From the NCBI RefSeq assembly GCF_048593235.1, contig NC_133618.1, positions 161,909,162 to 161,973,161 of the forward strand: a stretch of 64,000 nucleotides of DNA. Reading direction: 5' to 3'. Shown here piece after piece: positions 16,742 through 49,900 of the stretch (its first letter is position 1; every line of letters starts with the position of its first letter). Position numbers and translations under genes: made by a program. The notes beneath the pieces are model-generated. The model had not been told where the DNA came from. It ran no database searches and worked only from the letters and a program-made list of their open reading frames with translations. The DNA is from Sminthopsis crassicaudata (Eukaryota).

Positions 16742-19145
16742 CAAGGATTTGAGGTTAGAGGTCTTGAATGAAGTTTCCCCATGCAACAGATATAGTAGAA
16801 AAAACAAGAATGATAGCCTGATAGCAAACTGAGGGATAGGCAAGATAACATGGTATGCTAAGAAAGGCACTGGACTGGGAATAAAGACGCTGAATTTAGA
16901 GCCAGAAGGATCCTTACAGGGTATCTAACCCAATGCTCTTATTTCATTGATGAAATAAAGGAGGCTAAATGACTTATGCACAGGTGCACAGGGAACAGCA
17001 CCAGGCTTTTGGACCAGGCTATAGCATTTAAAGCTAGACAGATCTAGTCCAGACTTCTTATTTTACAGATGAGGTAACTGAGGCACAAATACTTTTAAAA
17101 AATTCTCTAGAGTAGAACTGAGGTTTAAACCCAGATCTTTGGCCTTAAAATCCAAGACTTTTCTCACTATAGATCATTTCCTCTTACCTATGGATTTTAG
17201 TTCTGTTTTAGCTATTAAACATATTACGTGGGCAAATCATTCAATAGTAGCAAAATTCATCTTTACCTGTCAAAAAGGAATACTACTCCTTGCCATAGTA
17301 AGCAGGGGCAAAATGAGAGTGGAAAGTGAAAGTGTTAAAAACAATACTATACAAATGAAGGATTTTGGATTAGATACCTTTTTTTTTTGAATGTAGAAAA
17401 TAGAAGACTTGCTCCTCCAAATTAGGAAGAAAGTTGGGTGCCTCTAGGGTATGATTTTACTTTATTGGAACAGGTATAAACCATGAATCATGGTAGTGAA
17501 CATGAGAGAAAAGTGGCTGAATGGATGAGAGGAAGGGATTTTCAATTATGAGATAGGAAAAAGAATTCAGATAGAAATCAAAAGGTTGTCTAGAGGTCTT
17601 TTTCCTTTTCTGACAGATGAGCCTCAGAACCCTAAGGAGCTGTTCTGTCCATTAACACACACCTGACTTCCTTGATTGCTCAGAACCTTCAAAAACTGTG
17701 AGGAAGATGGCCATCATAGTGGAAAGTGAGCGTGCTCCAGAATCTTTCTGTTCTATTTGCTTCTCCCATGGTTGTATAGACCCAACTTTTTCCTCAATTA
17801 TCATCCTGGGTATAAATCTTGAGAATAAAATATTAAATTGGGGATATTATTTCCCTTCCCCAATCTCATTATTGTTGCCAACATTCTCCTACCAGCACTG
17901 TGAATACACAAAACACCAAGAGAACTAAGACCCAAAGAGCAAAATTTCCAGCTGTTTACCTTTTAGAAACCTACTTATATCCCTTTGAAATTCATCACCA
18001 AGTTCTATCAATTCTTTTAACAGCAGGTAAGTGATGTAGTTAAGTGATAGGATTTTAATGGGAGGTTACTGCTTTATTTAGCAATTTGGGAACTCAAGTA
18101 TCATCATTAAACATGGTTATGGTCTCACCAAGTCTCTAGGGAAGAAATGCCAAAACTTATTACTTTGAAAAAAATCATGGAAGTGAAGCATTGGAGTTGG
18201 TGACTCAGCCTGAATAAATTAGGAATGAACTTCAAGTAAAATTTAGAGTGAATAAAGAGCCAAACTTTNNNNNNNNNNNNNNNNNNNNNNNNNNNNNNNN
18301 NNNNNNNNNNNNNNNNNNNNNNNNNNNNNNNNNNNNNNNNNNNNNNNNNNNNNNNNNNNNNNNNNNNNNNNNNNNNNNNNNNNNNNNNNNNNNNNNNNNN
18401 NNNNNNNNNNNNNNNNNNNNNNNNNNNNNNNNNNNNNNNNNNNNNNNNNNNNNNNNNNNNNNNNNNNNNNNNNNNNNNNNNNNNNNNNNNNNNNNNNAAT
18501 GTCTATTTGTCTCTCCTTTCTTCTTTCCTTCTTTCCCTCCTCTTTTTCTTTCCTTCCTTCTCTCTTTTAAAGAAAAACCTTTCTAACTGCTTCCTAAATA
18601 GCAGCATTGCTTTATTCATCCCACCTTCAGATGCAAGTTCCTAAGTCTCTGGAAAGAGATAATATGGATTGCCCACTGGGATTTAAAAATGAATTCTAAT
18701 GACCTTGTGGTTTCTTGTCTGAAATAGTAAACTACTGACAAGTGACTTTCACCATTTTCTTGATGACTCAGTTCAGATGTGTGCCCTAATTTGGAAGACT
18801 ATTTTATTTTTGTATGTGATCTGTAAAAGTCTTCATATACTCAACAATCTAAGTATACAATAATTTTGAGTTAAAATATTGGTGATTATTTCTTAAGTTT
18901 TCTTTGTGTTCCTTGTTATTCATGCTATAGATATTCTGGATTTCCTGCACTTAAAGTGCATTTCATAAAAAGAGATTTATAATAGAGTCTAGTGAAAAAA
19001 GTGAGGAGTAAGAAATAGGGTTGATAATTAATGAAAATTATTTCTAGGGCATTAGTCCTCTGGGTAAAATATGAAGTATAATGTATGGCACTCTATAGAT
19101 TTTCTATGAGAAAAGTAACAATTATCTAGCATGGGAACAGCATAC

Positions 19146-24075: not shown

Positions 24076-27000
24076 TCATCACTGATAATTCTGTAAAGGT
24101 CAGTTTTATTTGAAGCATGAAGTATAAACTTTTTCCTCCCCTTAACCATTCCCCTTTCCTCCATATCTAAGAAAACAAAATCATTTGCCTGCAGAAAAAA
24201 ATCTAAAGGGAGAAATAATAAGCAAACAAATAAGCTATATGCTGAATGAATAGGAATTACTTAACAGAGAGAAGGCACTGGAATTAAAAGGCATTGGGAA
24301 AAGCTTCCTGTAGAAGATGGGATTTAGTTATTATTGAAGGAAGCCAGAGACAGAAATTAGGAGGAAATGTTTTCCAGGCATGGAAGTGTCTGTGTGGAAC
24401 ATCAAGGAGACCAGAATCATTAGACCAAAGAATTATGTGGTGGNNNNNNNNNNNNNNNNNNNNNNNNNNNNNNNNNNNNNNNNNNNNNNNNNNNNNNNNN
24501 NNNNNNNNNNNNNNNNNNNNNNNNNNNNNNNNNNNNNNNNNNNNNNNNNNNNNNNNNNNNNNNNNNNNNNNNNNNGATTGGAACTGCACTGTGGAAAATC
24601 ACTTTGGCAGATGAACAGAGGATGGACTGGAATGGGGAGAGACTGGATGCAGATAAATTTATCAACAGGCTACTTCCTTGATTTTCTCTAGGTTTGCTCT
24701 GATTTCTTTGAAATCATTAGTATTTGGGTTGGTACTCATTTTAATATTTGTTTTTAGCCATGAATATAGTCCTGCTGAGAAGAGGTTGGACTATACCATC
24801 TTTTTAGAATGTCTTACTCTTTACTGCTACAATTTCTAAGGCACATTTTACAAGTTTGGAGTTTTCTCGATGAAAACTGTCTAGAAAGACATTGTACTTT
24901 GCAGAGGATACTTACTGGCTGTGTGGTCCTGAGCAAAGTATTTAATATCTGTTTACCTCAGTCTCCTCATCTGTAAAATGAAATAACAATAGCACCTAGC
25001 TCCCAAGGTTTTTATGAAATCAAATGAGATTAAAAAGTGCTTAGCAGTATAAAATAATTAATAAGTGCTACATAAATTAATTATCATCATCATCTTTCAA
25101 AAAATAAATCAAAGTTTGTAGGGATCTTGGATTTCTAATTTTAAATATAAATCCTAAACTATCCCAAATGTTAAAATTTAAACCTGATCATCAGGAATCT
25201 CAAGACAATTGGATGTGCCTGGAAGATTCACAGGTCAATTTCACTGAAACCTATATTTATAACCTTATAAACTTTGGAAACAGAAACATTGGTGATACCA
25301 TTCTTTGGACAAAGAGAGCTGAAAAAATGGATGAATTAAACCTTTCAATATTTTCTGATATCTTTTACAATTGTATGGATAGACTTTGTCTGTTGGAAAT
25401 ACTTAATGAGGGTTTATACTTCTATCATCCAAATAATGGCTTAAAATACTTCACACAAAGGAGCCCATGGATTGCATTTCCTAGAAATGGTGTATTCTAG
25501 CTTCATGTTTCACTTATGCTGTTTGGGTAAGCATAGCTTTTACACTAATTTCATTTCATTTTATTTTTTAAAATCATAACCCCATGAATCTCTTATTAGA
25601 CTCACTTCACACAAGTGAATTTTAAAAAAACCCTTTTTCCATAAAACATGTATCTCCAGTGGGCTCAGAAATCCTTTTGTGAAGCTTTAAAGGAGGAATG
25701 AAACTAAAATATGTATATTGCATGAGGAGAAAGCCTTTCAATCACTCAGCAGGTTGTGTTCTACAAACTGCCTTTGGTGGTAAAAGATCTGGGGAGAACT
25801 TTGGGTTGCTAGGCACCCTTTATCCAGTTACCTTCAGGATTGTTATCAGTCTTATTTGAGAATTTAAGAAGGCACTTCATCTCAGTTTGCTGATAACTAG
25901 GAGTCCATCACAGACATTACTTTTATGGTTACCATCATCTATATGCCAACATACATCTCATAATATACTGTTATGAAGATTCAGCATTTTGAATCAATTA
26001 GGCAATGTGTTTTAGTGGACATAGGGCTAACCTTGGAATTAGAAGCCTAGATTTAAGTCCTTCCTTGGACCCAAATAACTGAGTGACCCAGATAAGTCTT
26101 ACTCAGTGTCTCAGTTTCTTCATTTGTAAGAAGTAATATTTACCCCACCTATCTCACTGGATTATAGTGAGGAAAGACATTTGTAAACCTTAAGATAAAG
26201 ATTACACACACATACACACACACACACACACACACGCACACACACGCACACACATGCACACACACATACACACACACATACACACCTATGTGTAAATAAT
26301 CTTTGTTGTTTAAATGGTCCTGATTTATCATTTAAATAAGTGCTTTGCTGAAAATGCTGAAACAGATAATCTGGGTATTTTTGAGTCTTATACTTTACAA
26401 GAAGCCTTTCCCATTCCCTCTGAGATTATCTCCAATTTATCCTGCTCATATTTTATTTGTAAGTATTTGTTTGCCCGTTGTCTTCTACTTAGACTTTTAG
26501 TTCCATGAGTTCAGCAGGGACTGTCTTTTGCTTTTCTTTGTATCCCCAGTGATTAGCAGAGCACTCAGAACATAATAAGTATTTGATAAATTCTACTTGA
26601 TTGACAAATTCTTGATGTTTAAATAATGAGTAGGAATTCTCTTCCATGCTTAATTTTTCACAGCACTTATTGAAAGTCAGAAACATCTAATAATGAACTC
26701 CAAATCAGAAACGAGAGGTTAGCATCTCACCTGTAGCCCATTGACTGCATAGATCCCTAAAACTAAGTCAGATTTAAATGTGGTCTGGAGACCAATTTAT
26801 TATGTACTTCAGAGTCTCACTGAAAGAGATACCAGCTTTCTAGCCTGCGAGAAGCACACTGACAATCTTGGAAAAGACAGTCACTTGAACTCCTTGTATT
26901 TTAATGGTAACTTGTAAGAATTAAAAGCCTACTATGTGCCCAGGACTGTGCTAGGTGATAAGAGGCACACTGATAAGTAAAACACAACTTTTTTTTTTCT

Positions 27001-42912: not shown

Positions 42913-42989
42913 CTGTTAAACCAGTCATCTGTGTAGCGAGGGTAAGGATAAGGGTCATTGCTGCTGAAGTCATAGCTCGCTTCCGCATT
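42913..42989 (-). CDS. PCSK2: PCSK2 coding exon 6 (77 nt)
   Basis: Minus strand: acceptor ccttgtgtttttcag|AATGCG, donor AACAG|gtaaac. Translates NAEASYDFSSNDPYPYPRYTDDWFN(S), matching PC2 as recalled. The 77-nt length and phase 0/2 match the recalled human exon 6. Confidence 0.97.
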
Positions 42990-44254
42990 CTGAAAAACAC
43001 AAGGGATCTCACTGGGTCAATAGGAAAACAGAGGCACAGGAAACAGAAAATGCTACACAGGGTAGACTTTCCATGTTAATAAATCCCTCCTTAAGTCATT
43101 TGGTAACAAACTTTTGCTCAGAGAGCTCTGAGAAAAAGGTAGAGGAAGGAGGTAAAGTTTGTCCTCCTGGTTCCCTTCTTCCCATTCCTTCCCATATTTC
43201 CCCTACCCTAAAAAGGTTCATAGGTTTTGGACCTGTAAAATCTTTAGTTTTATAGGTCAGAATACTGAAGGCCTGATGTTGGGGGGGGGGGTGTGATGTG
43301 ACCTGATTGAGATCACACAGGTAGCTAGTGTCAGAGTAAGAATATAAAATCAACTCACTCTAGTATCCTTTCTACTATACCAACCCAAATCATCCTTCCT
43401 AAAATACAATAATCTGTCCCAGGCTTTTGAGATGGTAGAAAATTCATGTATGGTGCATTGTCACCCTCTGAAAGTACTTACATTTAAAAAGAAGAGAAGG
43501 TGGTGTTTTAATACAAAGGATGATTCACTAATGGATTCAAATCTAAGTTAATGAGGTTTCTATCAGCTCTAGACCTAGAGTTCTATTTAAAAGACTTGTC
43601 CATTCCTTTCCTGTTTTTACTGACACTCACTATAAGTTGTTCAGGACTTTACAACATACACTATTATCACAGAATTGTGAGCTAAAAGACTCAGGAGGAA
43701 ATCCAGGAAGAACCTATGTATCTCCTTCATTCTAATCTCACTATATGGATTCTCAGAAGTCATTGAATTCATACATGACCAAAAACTCCTTTTACTAAAT
43801 ATACACAATCTTCTTGTTTTCAGTTTCTGTGATATGGTCCTGGTACGAGGGATTAAAAGGAGAAGTTAGCTATTTCCTTCCTTGTAAAACTTTATTGACT
43901 TGTGAAGTAATTAATATTTCTGATGATCTTATTATGTAATTTCAAAAGGACTCAGATATTGGGAACACAGAATCATCACTCAGGGGTGTGCAGGGAAATG
44001 TTCAACCACCTCCTCATTAAAAAATGTATATATGAGACTTTTTGTTTTGAGTCAATCAGGATTAAGTGATTTGCTCAGGGTCACATATAAGTATCTGAGG
44101 CAGGGTGGATGACAGAGTGAGAGAGAAGAGTTGAGAATTACTGATGTTGCAGTCCTGAGAGACTGGAAGAGTAGCAATACATTGTATAGAAATGATTGAT
44201 TGGCTAAAAATTCAAACTCCTTGAATTTTATTCTGTGAAGCTACTGGACATTTT

Positions 44255-44482
44255 GGATGGCACAGTAGATAGAGTGTTGGACTTGGAGTCAGGAAGACTT
44301 GATTTCAAGTCCTGCCTTGCTAGCTGGGGCATTAAGTATGCTATTTGATCTCTCACAGTTTTGGTTTCCTTATTTGTTCAAGTGGGATAGTAGTAGTACT
44401 TCCTACACAGAGTTGCCGTGAAGATTAGTTGATTGAAGCACTTATAAAGTAGCATAAAAATGTGCTAGCTATTGCTGTTATT
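44255..44482 (+). mobile_element. MIR abutting the 3' end of the TCP1-like fragment
   Basis: GGCACAGTAGATAGAGTGTTGGACTTGGAGTCAGGAAGAC...TGCTAGCTATTGCTGTTATT. Confidence 0.75.
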
Positions 44483-44484
44483 CT

Positions 44485-45049
44485 GCAACTTTCAATAGAC
44501 ATTCTTTCCTAACTTCACCTATGGGTCATCAAAATATGAACAAAGTTTCCTGGAAATTGAGTCAGATCTTTCACACGTTCATACTTAACACAAAGTATCA
44601 CATCCATCACCCACTTAGCAAAAATATCACCACTAACTCTGGAGATTTTTGAAGATCTGGATGTATAAACAGAATTTATTAGCCCATCTTTTCCAAATTT
44701 ATTCACATTAATTACTGACAAGATTTTTAGTGCTGGCCAGAACTGCTTCATTATTAACAAGTGGGTCTTCTTTGTTTTGGACACGTGATCTCATTGATAT
44801 AGGAAGTTTCTCAAGAGGCAATTCCCTTTGAGAAAGGAGATTGGCTACTAGTTTCCTAAACCAGTTACACAACCACTCTATGTCAGAGGTTACACCCAAA
44901 CAGAGGTCACTTTGACCCTCAGACCAACTTTAGCCATTTTATTACATGCCCTCTCAAGCAAGCCTATAGCCACCAATGATTGATGTGGTTCTGATTCCCA
45001 CCCCCATGCCCATAGTACTAATTTTACAAAGTTGCTGTGCGGATATTAG
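44485..45049 (-). pseudogene. TCP1: TCP1 (CCT-alpha)-like pseudogene fragment, exons 4-6 region, apparently semi-processed
   Basis: Minus strand LISAQQLCKISTMGMGVGIRTTSIIGGYRLA* aligns without gaps to TCP1 VIIAAELLKNADELVKQKIHPTSVISGYRLAC. After a 201-bp insert, EAVLASTKNLV/NKFGKDGLINSVYTSRSSKISRVSGDIFAKWVMDVILCVKYERVKDLTQFPGNFVHILMTH aligns to [75 protein letters not shown]. Stops at 44954-44956, 44515-44517 and 44509-44511; one 4-nt frameshift near 44705-44716. Confidence 0.85.
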
Positions 45050-46162
45050 ATCATTATATAAAAAACAACTAGCTAGGTGGTATCATGGATAGAGAATGGA
45101 CTTAAACTCAACTCAAATCCTGCCTTGCATATTTTTCTAGATGTGTGATTTTGGACAAATCAATTAATTTTTTTTCTTTACTTGTAAAACAGGGACAACA
45201 ATAATGGTAAAATGAAATGTTTCTAAAGTGCTTGGCAATCCTTAAAACAATATATAAATACTAGTATTTATTTTTCTGTTAGAGTTTGGACTCTATTTAC
45301 CCAGAGCTTCTGTGTTATTTTTCTCTAGCACAAAATTTCTCAGTGCAGATTTTCCAGGAAATCATGAATGTTTTCATATTTAATCCTGAGAAATTTATGG
45401 CAATTGTGGTGCTCTGTTGTAAAACTTTTCTTTTTCATCTTATAGTCCTAACAAGATGCACAGAGCTTGAGAAACACTTTCTTTTCTTTCAGTTCCTCTT
45501 GCAGTTCCATGATTGACAATTTCATGGCAGTAATTAACTGACATCCCTAAACTATGTATTTGTTGTAGGACAAAGAACTGACAATGACAGTAGAGAAGTG
45601 GGATTATCTGCTAATGCTAATGCATTCAATAAAATAAGCTTTCTTGGAGGATCTCAGTGTTGTACTCTGAGATCTCTCTTTTTGACTTGCCCAACTTTGG
45701 GTTGACCTTGTAGATCTTGGGAACATTTCACTTCTGGCTTTTGGATTGCCATGCTCCAACCTAGAGTAAGAACCTGTGGCAGTTGTAGATTATATGTATG
45801 TATGTGTATATGTGTATGCATATGTGTGTCTGTTCATTTTCTTCTATAATATGCATATACATATACACATACATACATACACATCATGGTGGTCCTGACC
45901 TGGATTATGACATGAGCTGTACAGTTATTCCAGCTTTCTTTCCAATTAGGCATGTAGAATTTTAAAGTTACAATGTACTGTAAAACTCATCTAGTTTAGC
46001 ACCCAATTTTAAAGAAGAAAAAACTGAGGTCCTCTCAGAGTGAAGTGATTTTAATAAGGTCACACAATTGCAGAGGGAACGCTGAATACTAATTACTGCA
46101 TCTAAATTCACTGGGTAATGATATTCAGTGAGCTAAAACCAAAGCTCCAAAAATTTTTGCCT

Positions 46163-46919
46163 CAATTTGGAACTATGCTCAAAAAGTTACCAAACTTTGC
46201 ATACCCTTTGATCCAGCAGTGCTACTATTGAGCTTGAATCTCAAAGAGATCTTAAAGAAGGGAAAAGGACCCACATGTGCAAAAATGTTTGTGGCGCCCC
46301 TTTTTGTAGTGGCAAGAAACTGGAAACTGAGTGGATGCCCATCAATTGGAAAATGGCTGAATAAATTATGATATATGAATGTTATGGAATAGTATTGTTC
46401 TGCAAGAAATGACCAGCCGGATGATTTCAGAAAGGCCTGGAGAGACTTACATGAACTGATGCTAAGTGAAATGAGCAGAACCAGGAGATCATTATTCACA
46501 GTAACAATAAAACTATATGACAATCAATTCTGATGGACATGCCAGTTGTTCAGTAATGAAGAGAGCCATCTACACCCAGAGAGAGGACTATGGGAACTGA
46601 ATGTGGACGGCAATACAGTATTTTCATTCTTTCTGTTGTTGTTTGCTTGCATTTTTGTTTTCTTTCACTTTGTTTTTATTCCTCCTTGAACTGATTTTTC
46701 TTGTGCAGCAAGATAACTGTATAAATAGTCATACATATATTGGATTTAACATATATTTTAACATATTTAACATGTATAGACTACCTGCCATCTAGGGGAG
46801 GGGATGGGGGCAGGGAGAGGAAAATTTGAAACAGAAGGTTTTGTAAGGGTCAATGTTAAAAATTATCCATGCATATGTTTTGTCAATTAAAAGCTATAAT
46901 AAAATTTTTAAAAAAGACT
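46163..46919 (+). mobile_element. 5'-truncated L1 (ORF2 C-terminus plus 3' UTR), older subfamily
   Basis: ATACCCTTTGATCCAGCAGTG... ORF2 end with stops; G-rich 3' UTR; A-tail; imperfect TSD TTTTTGC(C/T)TCAA. Confidence 0.92.
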
Positions 46920-49900
46920 TTTTGCTTCAAATGCAGGCATCTTGAACTGTGTTGGGAGCAAGATGTGCACCTTTAATTGGGATAGAGGTGGTGTGAAGCA
47001 GGAGAAAGAGATCACTCCAGGGCAAATGCACAAAGCCATTGTTTGGAAAGCTGCTGTATAGGAGAAGGAAGGAAGAGAGAAAAGAGTGGAATCGGAAGAA
47101 GCTAACTTCAGCCTGTCATCTGGTAATTTCCCATTTTTAACTAATTATCCTTGCTAACAAGGTCACAAGCTTTGTTTTTCTGTTGCTGATAAAGTACACA
47201 TACTTATTGTTATTGCTTTGGTTCAAAGCCCTGATTGCCTTGTCTGAGTTGTATCTTTGTCCAAACTGATCATTTGCACAAGGAATCTGGTTCATGATTT
47301 CTTTCTAATCTGCCAAATTTTCCTAAAATGCAGATCTGATCATATCATCCCCTAAATCTAGAAACTCCACTAGCTGTCTAGTATTTCTAGTATCAAATAC
47401 AAAATTCTCTGTTTTGTATTTAAAACTCTTTGCAACTCTACCCTTTGATGCCTTTCGAATCTTCATACAACACACTCATTTGTTCACATACTAGTTTCAG
47501 CCATTAGTACGTCTAGTTGTTAATTCATGCCTTTGCACTGACTGCTCTTTATCTCTGGAATATACTCCTTCTCTTCTCTTGAACACTCTGGTTCTTCTCA
47601 AGATTTAACCCAAACACTACCTAGTTAACAGAGCTCGCTCTCTGTTTCTCTGTTTCTGCCTCGCTCTGCTCATTCCTTCGTTCATTCCTTCCTTCTTCCC
47701 TTCCTTCCTCTTTGTCTCTTTTTCTTTCTCCTCTCCATGTCTTTTTCTTTCTCCTTCTTTTTCTCCCTTCCTTTCATGCCCTTAGTTTAGAGATAAATGC
47801 TTTATTTTTAAATTTTTTGGGGAGGATTACATTTTAAGTTCTGAGCTGTTTCCTTCTATTTCTCCCCATTCCATACTAGTAGAAAAGGCTACCATTTTAC
47901 ACACACACACACACAAACACACACATGTATCTATATGCATAAATGTGCATATATGTATGTGTGTATGCATATATGCATACACATATATGTGTGTATGTAT
48001 ATACATAATTTTCTGATCCCCACTCCAATCCTGAAGCTATTAGGGCACCTCCTTCCCAAAATACTTCATATTTATTTTGTTTACATTATATATTTAAGCA
48101 TTTGTGCAGATATGGTCTCTTCTATTAGCATGTAAACTACTTAAGGGCAGAGCCTGTTTCACTTTGCTTAGCACAGTGCCTCACACATAGTAAATAAGTG
48201 GTACAATAAATGCTAGTTGGTTGATTGATGGTGAATTCCAAAAGGCTAGCAATGGCTCACTAGGGAAGAGCAATAATTTCGCTGGGACTTTGTACTTATA
48301 AAGTCCAAACTAATCAGGTTTGTTTAATACAAATAAAATTTTTTTATTGCCCCAGAGTAAATCATATTGTATTTGAACTTGAGCATTTATAAATGTATGT
48401 TTGAATGTGGAGCCTTGGGAATGTTTTTTGGGAAAAGACGATATCCCCCAAAATTGAATTTTTGGCTAAGTTAGGGTTAACCTGAAAACTTTTTTCAACT
48501 CTTGCTGAATATGTATTAGTCTACTTTTCTGCCTAAGTCCTGTACATATCCAGAACATAATTTAATCTCTCTTTGATTCAGGATCTTGCAGTCCTGAGGG
48601 TAATCATTAGAAGCATGAATTATCACTGTACCGTGATGGAGAATAATCAGTGTACCATGATGAGATGAATCTCCACTGACCCTAGGAGAGCCCTTATGAA
48701 TTCCTTTGGGGAAGAAATCCCTGATGCCAGCTTATTTTCTCATAAAAGTGAGTTGCAGAAAAAAAGGGGAGCATTTAAGGGCTTTGCCTAGTTGGGATCT
48801 ACATCTTAGAAGGGAGAGTCAGAGATTGACAAGATTAGGCTCTGGATAGAAGATAGAAACTCATAGCTAAAGACCAGACAGTTGGATAATGCTCCACAAA
48901 AGAAGGAAGGGCCTGTATTTTGCATTAAGCTAAGAAAAGTCAAGGGAATCTGAATTCTTATGTGTAAAAAGAATTTGAGTAATTCAGCGATTGTTTCTTA
49001 AGTGCCTATTTTGTATACCTACTAGATAGCATAGTGGAGAGAGTGCTGGACCTATAATCAGAAATTCTGAGTTCAAATTGAGCCTAAGATACAGTAGTAT
49101 GTGATTTTGGGAAAGTAATTTACCTATGTCTGCCTCAGGAAAATTGGGTGAGTAGTAACACGTACCTCTCATGGTTTTTATTAGGTTGAAATTATAAACN
49201 NNNNNNNNNNNNNNNNNNNNNNNNNNNNNNNNNNNNNNNNNNNNNNNNNNNNNNNNNNNNNNNNNNNNNNNNNNNNNNNNNNNNNNNNNNNNNNNNNNNN
49301 NNNNNNNNNNNNNNNNNNNNNNNNNNNNNNNNNNNNNNNNNNNNNNNNNNNNNNNNNNNNNNNNNNNNNNNNNNNNNNNNNNNNNNNNNNNNNNNNNNNN
49401 NNNNNNNNNNNNNNNNNNNNNNNNNNNNNNNNNNNNNNNNNNNNNNNNNNNNNNNNNNNNNNNNNNNNNNNNNNNNNNNNNNNNNNNNNNNNNNNNNNNN
49501 NNNNNNNNNNNNNNNNNNNNNNNNNNNNNNNNNNNNNNNNNNNNNNNNNNNNNNNNNNNNNNNNNNNNNNNNNNNNNNNNNNNNNNNNNNNNNNNNNNNN
49601 NNNNNNNNNNNNNNNNNNNNNNNNNNNNNNNNNNNNNNNNNNNNNNNNNNNNNNNNNNNNNNNNNNNNNNNNNNNNNNNNNNNNNNNNNNNNNNNNNNNN
49701 NNNNNNNNNNNNNNNNNNNNNNNNNNNNNNNNNNNNNNNNNNNTTTTTCCCCACTCCTTCTCCTCCTCTTTCTCCTTCTTCTTGACAACATCTTCATTAT
49801 TAAAATGTGATCTTCTTACCAGTAGGAAATATCTCATTCATCATATTTATATCCATAGTGCCTTAGCACAGTGCCTGACACAATTGATAGACAAAATATT

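What the first reader, a model, noticed from the sequence alone, without database searches (positions are those of the whole stretch)
44485..45049. Semi-processed TCP1 copy in PCSK2 intron 5: insert at the intron-4 position, intron 5 absent
Seen: a gap-free 98-nt block (45049-44952) matching TCP1 codons 94-126, then 201 bp of unrelated sequence (44951-44751), then sequence matching codon 126 onward that runs straight through codon 163 without interruption. Established (recalled human TCP1 CDS exon sizes 64, 86, 129, 98, 111, 182...): intron 4 interrupts codon 126 and intron 5 interrupts codon 163. Inference: this is a retrocopy of a partially spliced TCP1 pre-mRNA, which is rare. The splice dinucleotides appear decayed (GG for GT, AA for AG). 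Homology also begins at the exon-4 start, so intron 3 may have been retained as well. No ORF in the supplied track covers the whole fragment.
Basis: partly seen in the sequence, partly recalled or inferred. Interest (0 to 1): 0.7.

Follow-up and report, generated by a model that had tools for sequence, protein, structure and literature searches.

The report
Decayed TCP1 retrocopy fragment, odd spacer
This is a dead, RNA-derived fragment of the chaperonin gene TCP1 inside a PCSK2 intron; 201 bp sit exactly at TCP1's intron-4 position but are not a recognisable copy of that intron, so the rare "half-spliced retrocopy" reading stays unproven and the object is fairly ordinary.

Summary
The observation largely holds. 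On the minus strand, 45049-44952 derives from TCP1 exon 4, although it is not gap-free and its middle 30 nt are unrecognisable. Then come 201 bp of non-TCP1 sequence (44951-44751). Exon 5 and exon 6 sequence follows, joined in register with no intron 5 (44750-44495). The recalled exon sizes (98/111/182) and intron positions are correct in two dasyurids, pig, turtle and frog, and marsupial TCP1 does have intron 5. The copy is therefore RNA-derived. It arose on the marsupial lineage and is about 31% diverged.

Intron 4 of TCP1 has hosted the snoRNA SNORA29 since before marsupials and eutherians split. The spacer has no trace of it; a copy decayed at this pseudogene's rate would be missed only 2.5-10% of the time. 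The spacer shows no significant similarity to present-day intron 4 (533-535 bp). About 70 nt of it are an internal fragment of an interspersed repeat that today's intron lacks. So it is not an intact retained intron 4.

Against that, exon 4 is bounded by non-exonic DNA exactly at both of its splice junctions, which is unlikely by chance (about 1 in 800). An incompletely or aberrantly spliced template (about 0.45) and a later insertion into a processed copy (about 0.35) remain nearly level. Orthologous loci would decide.

The parts
45072..45278 (+). MIR-type SINE, near full length, antisense to the TCP1 piece; its head lies 22 nt from the exon-4 block
   Evidence: Aligns to the other flanking SINE over about 200 nt (score 43 vs shuffles 26+-4). 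Depth is 10-60x baseline at >=80% likeness.
45050..45071 (-). 22-nt stub between the SINE and the exon-4 block; not exon 3. It could be an intron-3 end or target DNA
   Evidence: 5/22 matches to the exon-3 end, 9/22 to the exon-2 end, 10/22 to the intron-3 end (p 0.06).
44952..45049 (-). TCP1 exon-4-derived block (codons 94-126). The 3' 34 nt are 94% identical, the 5' 30 nt are recognisable with indels, and the middle is scrambled. TGA replaces Cys125 at 44956-44954
   Evidence: E 3.6e-6; p 0.0013.
44751..44951 (-). 201-bp spacer exactly at the exon 4/5 junction; not recognisable as intron 4 and lacking SNORA29
44776..44845 (.). Internal fragment of an old interspersed repeat, inside the spacer. 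Other copies lie at 41809-41972 and 12704-12875
   Evidence: nhmmer E 2.5e-5 with a profile built without the spacer. Depth is 1.7-2.3x baseline at 44758-44851 only. Homology does not extend over the rest of the spacer.
44636..44750 (-). TCP1 exon-5-derived sequence (111 nt plus 4 inserted nt, giving a frameshift and an in-frame stop)
   Evidence: 67% identity to Antechinus exon 5; profile E 1.3e-9; reading frames.
44495..44635 (-). TCP1 exon-6-derived sequence (positions 1-144 of 182), joined directly to exon 5; two stops near its end
   Evidence: 70% identity; profile E 1.4e-11; PDB E 2e-11.
44250..44485 (+). MIR-type SINE, near full length, antisense to TCP1; its tail lies 9 nt from the end of TCP1 homology. 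No TCP1 sequence follows it
   Evidence: depth up to 90,000; tRNA-like head in the loose ends. No exon-6 tail, exon 7, 8 or 12 downstream.
42913..42989 (-). PCSK2 coding exon (NAEASYDFSSNDPYPYPRYTDDWFN) with AG/GT borders. It shows the TCP1 piece lies sense in the upstream PCSK2 intron
   Evidence: Sequence read. Identity is from my own knowledge of the PC2 protein, and an earlier scan note places PCSK2 exon 8 at 9384-9561.

Best explanation
Shown: this is a dead fragment of a reverse-transcribed marsupial TCP1 (CCT-alpha) transcript, covering exon 4 to two-thirds of exon 6. It lies sense in a PCSK2 intron, between two later or unrelated MIR-type SINEs. Exons 5 and 6 are joined as in spliced RNA. 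The copy formed on the marsupial lineage after about three-quarters of the marsupial-branch changes in TCP1 had occurred. It has since decayed neutrally (about 0.32 substitutions per site, with stops and frameshifts) and has lost everything 3' of exon-6 position ~145.

Inferred: the template was an incompletely or aberrantly spliced TCP1 transcript, so that non-exonic RNA flanked exon 4 on both sides. That RNA would be the end of intron 3 upstream and intron-4-derived sequence downstream. The intron-4-derived part is not the whole intron. Either the snoRNA-bearing core was already missing from the RNA (cryptic splicing, or a cassette exon taken from intron 4), or it was deleted and patched after integration. 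What remains is 201 bp, including a roughly 70-nt repeat fragment. The element has no function today.
For: TCP1 identity and exon-by-exon homology.
Intron 5 absent in the copy but present in dasyurid TCP1.
Spacer boundaries coincide with exon-4 position 95-98 and exon-5 position 1-2.
Exon 4 reaches its first bases (p 0.0013-0.003) and is preceded by 22 nt that are not exon 3.
My estimate of the chance that both edges of exon 4 meet non-exonic DNA within about 3 nt of splice junctions in a fully processed copy is about 0.03 x 0.045 = 1.3e-3 (inference).
Weak junction-anchored resemblance to the real introns: 5' end of intron 4 p 0.05 and p 0.04 against Antechinus; end of intron 3 p 0.06.
Marsupial origin: 28 vs 9 diagnostic sites (p 0.003), with about 73% of marsupial-branch changes already present.
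Neutral decay, even across codon positions (0.65/0.75/0.66).
Semi-processed retrocopies are an established class (PMC4151081).
Against: SNORA29 lies in intron 4 in frog, pig and both dasyurids, but is absent from the spacer and from the whole window. Simulations show such a copy would be missed only 2.5-10% of the time.
The spacer is 201 bp against 533-535 bp for the dasyurid intron.
There is no similarity to intron 4 above shuffles.
The second dasyurid's intron 4 gives no anchored signal (7, when 13-19 is expected for true homologues), and the 3' end gives none.
About 70 nt of the spacer are a repeat fragment not detectable in either dasyurid TCP1 locus.
No poly(A) tail or target-site duplication survives.
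Retained-intron retrocopies are a small minority of retrocopies (prior from my own knowledge, roughly 1-2%).
Confidence: 0.45

Rival explanations
1. An ordinary, fully processed TCP1 retrocopy. It happens to be 5'-truncated (or later deleted) at the exon 3/4 junction and later received about 201 bp of unrelated DNA at the exon 4/5 junction. That DNA would be an old repeat fragment plus unclassified sequence, arriving by transposition or as repair filler.
For: The spacer has no SNORA29 and no intron-4 similarity.
A third of it belongs to an interspersed repeat family with copies 2.9 kb and 32 kb away.
This neighbourhood is dense in later SINE insertions, with two abutting the fragment.
Large losses clearly happened here, since the whole 3' part is gone.
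Processed retrocopies vastly outnumber semi-processed ones (my own knowledge).
Against: It needs two independent coincidences with splice junctions, jointly about 1e-3 by my estimate.
The repeat piece is an internal fragment of about 70 nt without termini, poly(A) or a target-site duplication.
The 106 nt next to exon 4 are single-copy and unrelated to that repeat, so a single clean transposon insertion does not fit.
Confidence: 0.35
2. Exactly: a retrocopy of a pre-mRNA with the complete intron 4 retained, the 201 bp being that intron simply decayed.
For: Position at the junction. Intron 4 is short in some lineages (256 bp in turtle).
Against: The source lineage's intron 4 carried a 137-nt SNORA29, which the spacer lacks.
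Outside the repeat fragment the longest stretch is 106 nt, too short to hold it.
The repeat fragment is absent from the modern intron.
Confidence: 0.03
3. A patchwork made in one event. Reverse transcriptase would have switched between templates, or a double-strand break would have been filled with several captured pieces (a TCP1 cDNA fragment, other RNA or DNA). That would explain an internal fragment with no poly(A) tail.
For: It is an internal fragment lacking its 3' end. TCP1 homology ends within 9 and 22 nt of SINE ends. The spacer is composite.
Against: The SINEs are antisense to the TCP1 piece (loose ends), which a single continuous cDNA would not give.
The model does not explain why the breakpoints fall at exon junctions.
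Nothing specific supports it.
Confidence: 0.12
4. A DNA-level duplicate of part of the TCP1 gene, or a copy of a marsupial TCP1 that naturally lacks intron 5.
For: Non-exonic DNA flanks exon 4.
Against: Dasyurid TCP1 has intron 5 (2291 and 1668 bp), and its position is conserved from frog to mammals. The exon 5/6 join in the copy is exact. No intron similarity.
Confidence: 0.02

Closest known systems
Processed (retro)pseudogenes of housekeeping genes, made by LINE reverse transcriptase
   Same: cDNA-type join of exons 5 and 6. Lies at an unrelated locus (a PCSK2 intron, whereas the parent gene sits next to a thiolase gene). Neutral decay with stops and frameshifts.
   Different: Only an internal piece survives (codons 94 to about 210). 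No poly(A) tail or target-site duplication is visible. 201 bp of non-exonic DNA sit at one parental intron position.
Semi-processed retrocopies (e.g. mouse preproinsulin I; TMF1 insertion in CYBB; PMC4151081)
   Same: One parental intron is removed, while non-exonic sequence occupies the exact position of a neighbouring one. Possibly also unspliced at intron 3.
   Different: In the known cases the retained sequence is demonstrably the parental intron. Here it shows no homology, is 201 bp rather than about 535 bp, lacks the intron's conserved snoRNA and contains a foreign repeat fragment.
TCP1 intron 4 as host of the H/ACA snoRNA SNORA29 (Rfam RF00429; PMC4824147)
   Same: The spacer occupies the position of this host intron.
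   Different: No SNORA29 remnant is present. This is the main argument against simple intron retention.

Membership tests
Processed retropseudogene | Significant homology to the parental mRNA | tested here: met
Processed retropseudogene | A conserved parental intron is precisely absent | tested here: met
   Intron 5 is absent, with the join at 44636/44635. It is present in dasyurid, pig, turtle and frog TCP1.
Processed retropseudogene | 3' poly(A) tail | tested here: not met
   The copy ends at exon-6 position ~145 against a SINE, and no exon-6 tail, exon 7, 8 or 12 follows. The tail may have been lost secondarily.
Processed retropseudogene | Target-site duplications | tested here: inconclusive
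   None is evident by eye at the fragment ends or around the spacer. At this age they would be expected to have decayed.
Processed retropseudogene | Located away from the parent gene | tested here: met
   The window holds PCSK2 exons. The parent TCP1 is flanked by a thiolase gene.
Semi-processed (intron-retaining) retrocopy | Non-exonic sequence exactly at a parental intron position while another intron is spliced out | tested here: met
Semi-processed (intron-retaining) retrocopy | That sequence is homologous to the parental intron | tested here: not met
   No similarity above shuffles. Anchored tests are weak and inconsistent. The intron's conserved SNORA29 is absent. Power for the non-snoRNA parts is only moderate (67-88%).
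Semi-processed (intron-retaining) retrocopy | Splice-site dinucleotides GT...AG at the borders | tested here: not met
   The borders read GG...AA. This is compatible with decay, so it is uninformative.
Transposable-element insertion (for the spacer) | Whole insert matches one repeat family, with termini, tail and target-site duplication | tested here: not met
   Only 44776-44845 matches. The family's homology continues beyond that in the other copies but not in the spacer. No repeat library was available.

The most novel reading that the evidence does not exclude
The template was a TCP1 transcript in which only the snoRNA-bearing core of intron 4 had been removed, by cryptic splicing or snoRNA-linked processing, leaving the intron's flanks between exons 4 and 5, with intron 3 unspliced. 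The pseudogene would then be a fossil record of an alternative processing route for a snoRNA host intron in an early Australian marsupial.
Probability: 0.15. Interest if true: 0.4.

Novelty: new member of a known kind. Interest (0 to 1): 0.2.

Why it matters
It matters little in itself, being one more decayed retropseudogene fragment in an intron. Two things are useful. First, a conserved intronic snoRNA (SNORA29 in TCP1 intron 4) is a much sharper test for claimed intron retention in old retrocopies than comparing neutrally decayed intron sequence, and here it rules out the simple reading. Second, if the spacer did come in with the RNA, the locus would record an unusual TCP1 splicing intermediate. 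That is mildly interesting for snoRNA host-gene processing, but not a new kind of element.

Tried and rejected
- Protein-level searches with block 1 alone found nothing in the PDB or Pfam. Two earlier calls failed because my coordinates were out of frame.
- The HMMER search with the 89-aa ORF returned only five fragment proteins. Full-length TCP1 was reached indirectly, via P0003 and then a cluster listing.
- Rfam on the region found no snoRNA, only a chance FTHFS hit at E 0.67.
- Spacer against introns 3, 4 and 5 and reverse-complement intron 4: chance level.
- Two-species intron 3 and intron 4 profiles against 46600-43000: nothing. The strong intron-6 hit there is a shared young repeat, not TCP1 homology.
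- Search for exons 1-3 upstream and exon-6 tail, 7, 8 and 12 downstream: nothing.
- The stub does not convincingly match the end of exon 2, which would indicate an exon-3-skipped isoform: 9/22, weak.
- A single template-switch chimera with the flanking SINEs was considered. I marked it down once the SINEs proved antisense to TCP1.
- Relative dating of the repeat fragment against the retrocopy: the three repeat copies are equidistant and about as old as the copy, so this is uninformative.
- Target-site duplication around the spacer or the 3' SINE: only weak short matches by eye, not pursued.
- The orthologous PCSK2 intron in other marsupials could not be fetched. All 24 listed sequencing runs are the same organism, and the PCSK2 gene is probably too long for the encoding-contig tool (my estimate; not tried).
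- Two proteins that may be primate- or human-derived (P0001, P0110) were not looked up further, and no contig of theirs was fetched.

Full report
WHAT IS THERE

Reading the minus strand from 45400 to 44200 shows, in order:
- a MIR-type SINE (about 45278-45072);
- a 22-nt stub;
- a block resembling TCP1 exon 4 (45049-44952);
- 201 bp of other sequence (44951-44751);
- sequence resembling TCP1 exons 5 and 6 (44750-44495);
- 9 nt, then a second MIR-type SINE (about 44485-44250).

Further downstream on the same strand lies a PCSK2 coding exon with AG/GT borders (42913-42989). I recognise it from my own knowledge of the PC2 protein, and an earlier scan note places PCSK2 exon 8 at 9384-9561. The TCP1 piece is therefore sense within a PCSK2 intron. 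I did not verify that it is intron 5.

IS IT TCP1?

Yes.
- The 89-aa ORF 44515-44784(-) matches CCT-alpha residues 137-201 of solved TRiC structures at E 2e-11.
- A bat TCP1 protein gives E 7e-12 by tblastn against the whole window, and nothing else in the 64 kb is convincing.
- Block 1 alone finds nothing as protein. At DNA level, a five-species exon-4 profile hits 44996-44955 at E 3.6e-6 in a whole-window search. Exon 5 gives E 1.3e-9 and exon 6 gives E 1.4e-11.

GETTING A REAL GENE STRUCTURE

The decayed ORF shares no 5-residue word with real TCP1, so I used the one HMMER job. Through a frog TCP1 fragment and a cluster listing I reached P0128, the TCP1 protein shared by Antechinus flavipes and Sarcophilus harrisii. 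I then fetched two dasyurid TCP1 loci (L001, L002) and loci from pig, sea turtle and Xenopus.

Splice junctions were placed by requiring GT/GC-AG and that each exon plus the first bases of the next exon translate to the known protein. The pseudogene pieces were never joined, and all comparisons with the window were made exon by exon.

Exon sizes are 64/86/129/98/111/182/127/176/124/193/164 in these species (turtle exon 1 is 67), and the last exon varies between 214 and 223. Intron 4 splits codon 126 and intron 5 splits codon 163, and both positions are conserved from frog to mammals. Dasyurid TCP1 has intron 5 (2291 and 1668 bp), which removes the rival "marsupial TCP1 lacks intron 5".

ANATOMY OF THE COPY

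| Piece | Exon positions | Window | Identity |
|---|---|---|---|
| Exon 5 | 2-103 | 44749-44644 | 67%, with +3 and +1 nt |
| Exon 6 | 4-144 | 44632-44495 | 70%, with -3 nt |
| Exon 4, 3' part | 62-95 | 44988-44955 | 32/34 |
| Exon 4, middle | 31-61 | about 45020-44989 | 7/31, chance level |
| Exon 4, 5' part | 3-30 | 45048-45021 | recognisable with three 1-nt indels |

- Exons 5 and 6 abut in register at 44636/44635, so there is no intron 5.
- The 5' part of exon 4 lies in the expected register (banded test: 4/3000 shuffles and 5/1500 real-sequence controls reach the observed score).
- So the block is exon 4 from about its first base to its last, but it is not "gap-free".
- The 22 nt upstream are not exon 3 (5/22, where about 15/22 would be expected).
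- No exon 1-3 sequence lies beyond the SINE, and no exon-6 tail, exon 7, 8 or 12 lies beyond the other SINE.
- Disablements include TGA at Cys125 (44956-44954), a frameshift and a stop in exon 5, and two stops near the end of the exon-6 part.

AGE AND SOURCE

- Identity to Antechinus is even across codon positions (0.65/0.75/0.66), the neutral pattern.
- At 47 sites where Antechinus and pig differ, the copy agrees with the marsupial 28 times and with pig 9 times (p 0.003).
- At 23 polarised marsupial-derived sites it carries the derived base 13 times and the ancestral base 6 times. After correcting for its own decay (retention 0.74 at invariant sites), about 73% of the marsupial-branch changes predate the copy.
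- It therefore arose from the marsupial TCP1 gene well after the split from eutherians.
- Earlier notes in this scan call the genome a dunnart. I did not verify that, but the closeness to dasyurid TCP1 fits.

IS THE SPACER INTRON 4?

Position says yes. The spacer fills exactly the gap between exon-4 position 95-98 and exon-5 position 1-2.

Content says no.
1. Length: dasyurid intron 4 is 533-535 bp (pig 383, turtle 256, frog 799) against 201 bp.
2. Similarity: local alignments of the spacer to introns 3, 4 and 5 are within the shuffle range.
3. The snoRNA: intron 4 contains SNORA29.
   - Rfam finds it in intron 4 at L001:6290-6426, L002:6356-6490, pig L003:3312-3451 and Xenopus L005:4614-4748.
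   - PMC4824147 states the same for human.
   - It is therefore ancestral and was present in the source gene.
   - The spacer scores 11 against SNORA29 (shuffle maximum 13-14).
   - A SNORA29 profile finds nothing near the fragment, while the same method recovers all three exons.
   - Rfam at E<=10 finds no snoRNA in 44100-45500.
   - Simulated copies with 38-42% differences plus indels would score that low only 2.5-10% of the time.
4. The repeat fragment: a profile built from two other window copies (41809-41972 and 12704-12875), with the spacer left out, hits 44776-44845 at E 2.5e-5 and hits nothing in the dasyurid TCP1 loci.
   - Contigs of two DNA samples laid at >=80% likeness show 1.7-2.3x baseline depth only at 44758-44851.
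   - The remaining spacer and both TCP1 blocks are single-copy there.
   - In the other two copies the repeat continues on both sides, but not in the spacer.
   - So the spacer holds an internal repeat fragment of about 70 nt, plus 106 nt and 25 nt of unique sequence. Neither unique stretch can hold a 137-nt snoRNA.
5. Junction-anchored comparisons are weak and inconsistent.
   - First 40 nt against the intron-4 start: p 0.05, tied with intron 11.
   - The 106 unique nt against the first 140 nt of intron 4: best of 11 introns in Antechinus (11, p 0.04) but only 7 in the 94%-identical second dasyurid, when 13-19 is expected for true homologues.
   - The 3' end gives no signal.
   - The stub against the end of intron 3: 10/22, p 0.06.

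WEIGHING

An intact retained intron 4 is excluded.

What remains in favour of an RNA-borne origin is geometry. Exon 4 meets non-exonic DNA within about 3 nt of both of its splice junctions, while exons 5 and 6 are fused. For a fully processed copy this needs a truncation or deletion boundary at a junction (about 4.5%) and an insertion at a junction (about 3%), jointly about 1e-3. These figures are my estimate, an inference.

Against that stand three things: the low prior of intron-containing retrocopies, the missing snoRNA, and the foreign repeat fragment. These require either an aberrant transcript (cryptic splicing or a cassette exon that excluded the snoRNA core) or later deletion and patching.

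My rough likelihood accounting puts "the spacer came with the RNA" and "later insertion by coincidence" within a factor of two of each other. It flips with reasonable changes in the guessed rates. I therefore give 0.45 and 0.35, with 0.12 for one-event patchwork models and small values for the rest. All listed sequencing runs are the same organism and I did not attempt to fetch the long PCSK2 gene from other assemblies, so the decisive test was out of reach: whether orthologs have an empty site, the same spacer, or a longer one with snoRNA remains.

FLANKING SINES

Both are near full length and homologous to each other. Both are sense on the + strand, shown by the tRNA-like head sequence in the loose ends before 44256, and so are antisense to TCP1. 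This corrects an earlier notebook entry. It also argues against a single continuous template-switch cDNA. TCP1 homology ends within 9 and 22 nt of SINE ends, and the whole 3' part of the cDNA is missing. That shows large rearrangements happened here, but I cannot reconstruct them.

LITERATURE

Semi-processed pseudogenes are a recognised minor class, with mouse preproinsulin I and TMF1-in-CYBB as examples (PMC4151081). My searches found no paper on a TCP1 example.

VERDICT

This is a real but ordinary decayed TCP1 retro-fragment. The attractive inference of a retained intron 4 fails its sharpest test in its simple form and survives only as a remodelled or partial-intron scenario that cannot be told apart from a coincidental insertion. 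Interest is low.

Noticed in passing
L001:5481-5617 and 6290-6426; L002:5547-5683 and 6356-6490; L003:3312-3451; L004:2293-2427; L005:2241-2378 and 4614-4748: SNORA29 changes copy number and host intron within TCP1. Dasyurids carry two copies (introns 3 and 4, 93% identical to each other), pig one (intron 4), Xenopus two (introns 1 and 4), and sea turtle one (intron 1 only). This suggests intragenic duplication, loss or gene conversion of the snoRNA.
   Followed up: partly
window 44955-44988: A 34-nt stretch of the exon-4 block is 32/34 identical to dasyurid TCP1, while the rest of the copy is about 69% identical (scan statistic p about 0.02). Exon-4 positions 31-61, just upstream, are completely unrecognisable. 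This patchiness is unexplained.
   Followed up: partly
window 46199-46599: A young repeat, present in both orientations, is also found in dasyurid TCP1 intron 6 (nhmmer E 2e-75 and 2e-48). It is a shared transposable element, not TCP1 homology.
   Followed up: no
window 41809-41972 and 12704-12875: Two copies of an unclassified old interspersed repeat (64% identical over 176 columns), the family to which about 70 nt of the spacer belong. I could not name the family without a repeat library.
   Followed up: partly
window 44279-44501, 44509-44659, 44656-44814, 45080-45500: Low-depth contigs from runs guessed to be RNA (X7, X10) cover parts of the region. They may be PCSK2 intronic pre-mRNA or contaminating DNA, and there is no sign of a discrete transcript.
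   Followed up: no
window 45000-45012 and 44942-44953: The heptamer GGGCATG occurs in the scrambled middle of the exon-4 block and again at the first bases of the spacer. This may be a trace of slippage or patch repair, or it may be chance.
   Followed up: no
window 7200-7498, 8609-8837, 9823-10119, 18269-18497, 24444-24575, 34645-35468, 49200-49743: Seven runs of N (2554 bases in total).
   Followed up: no
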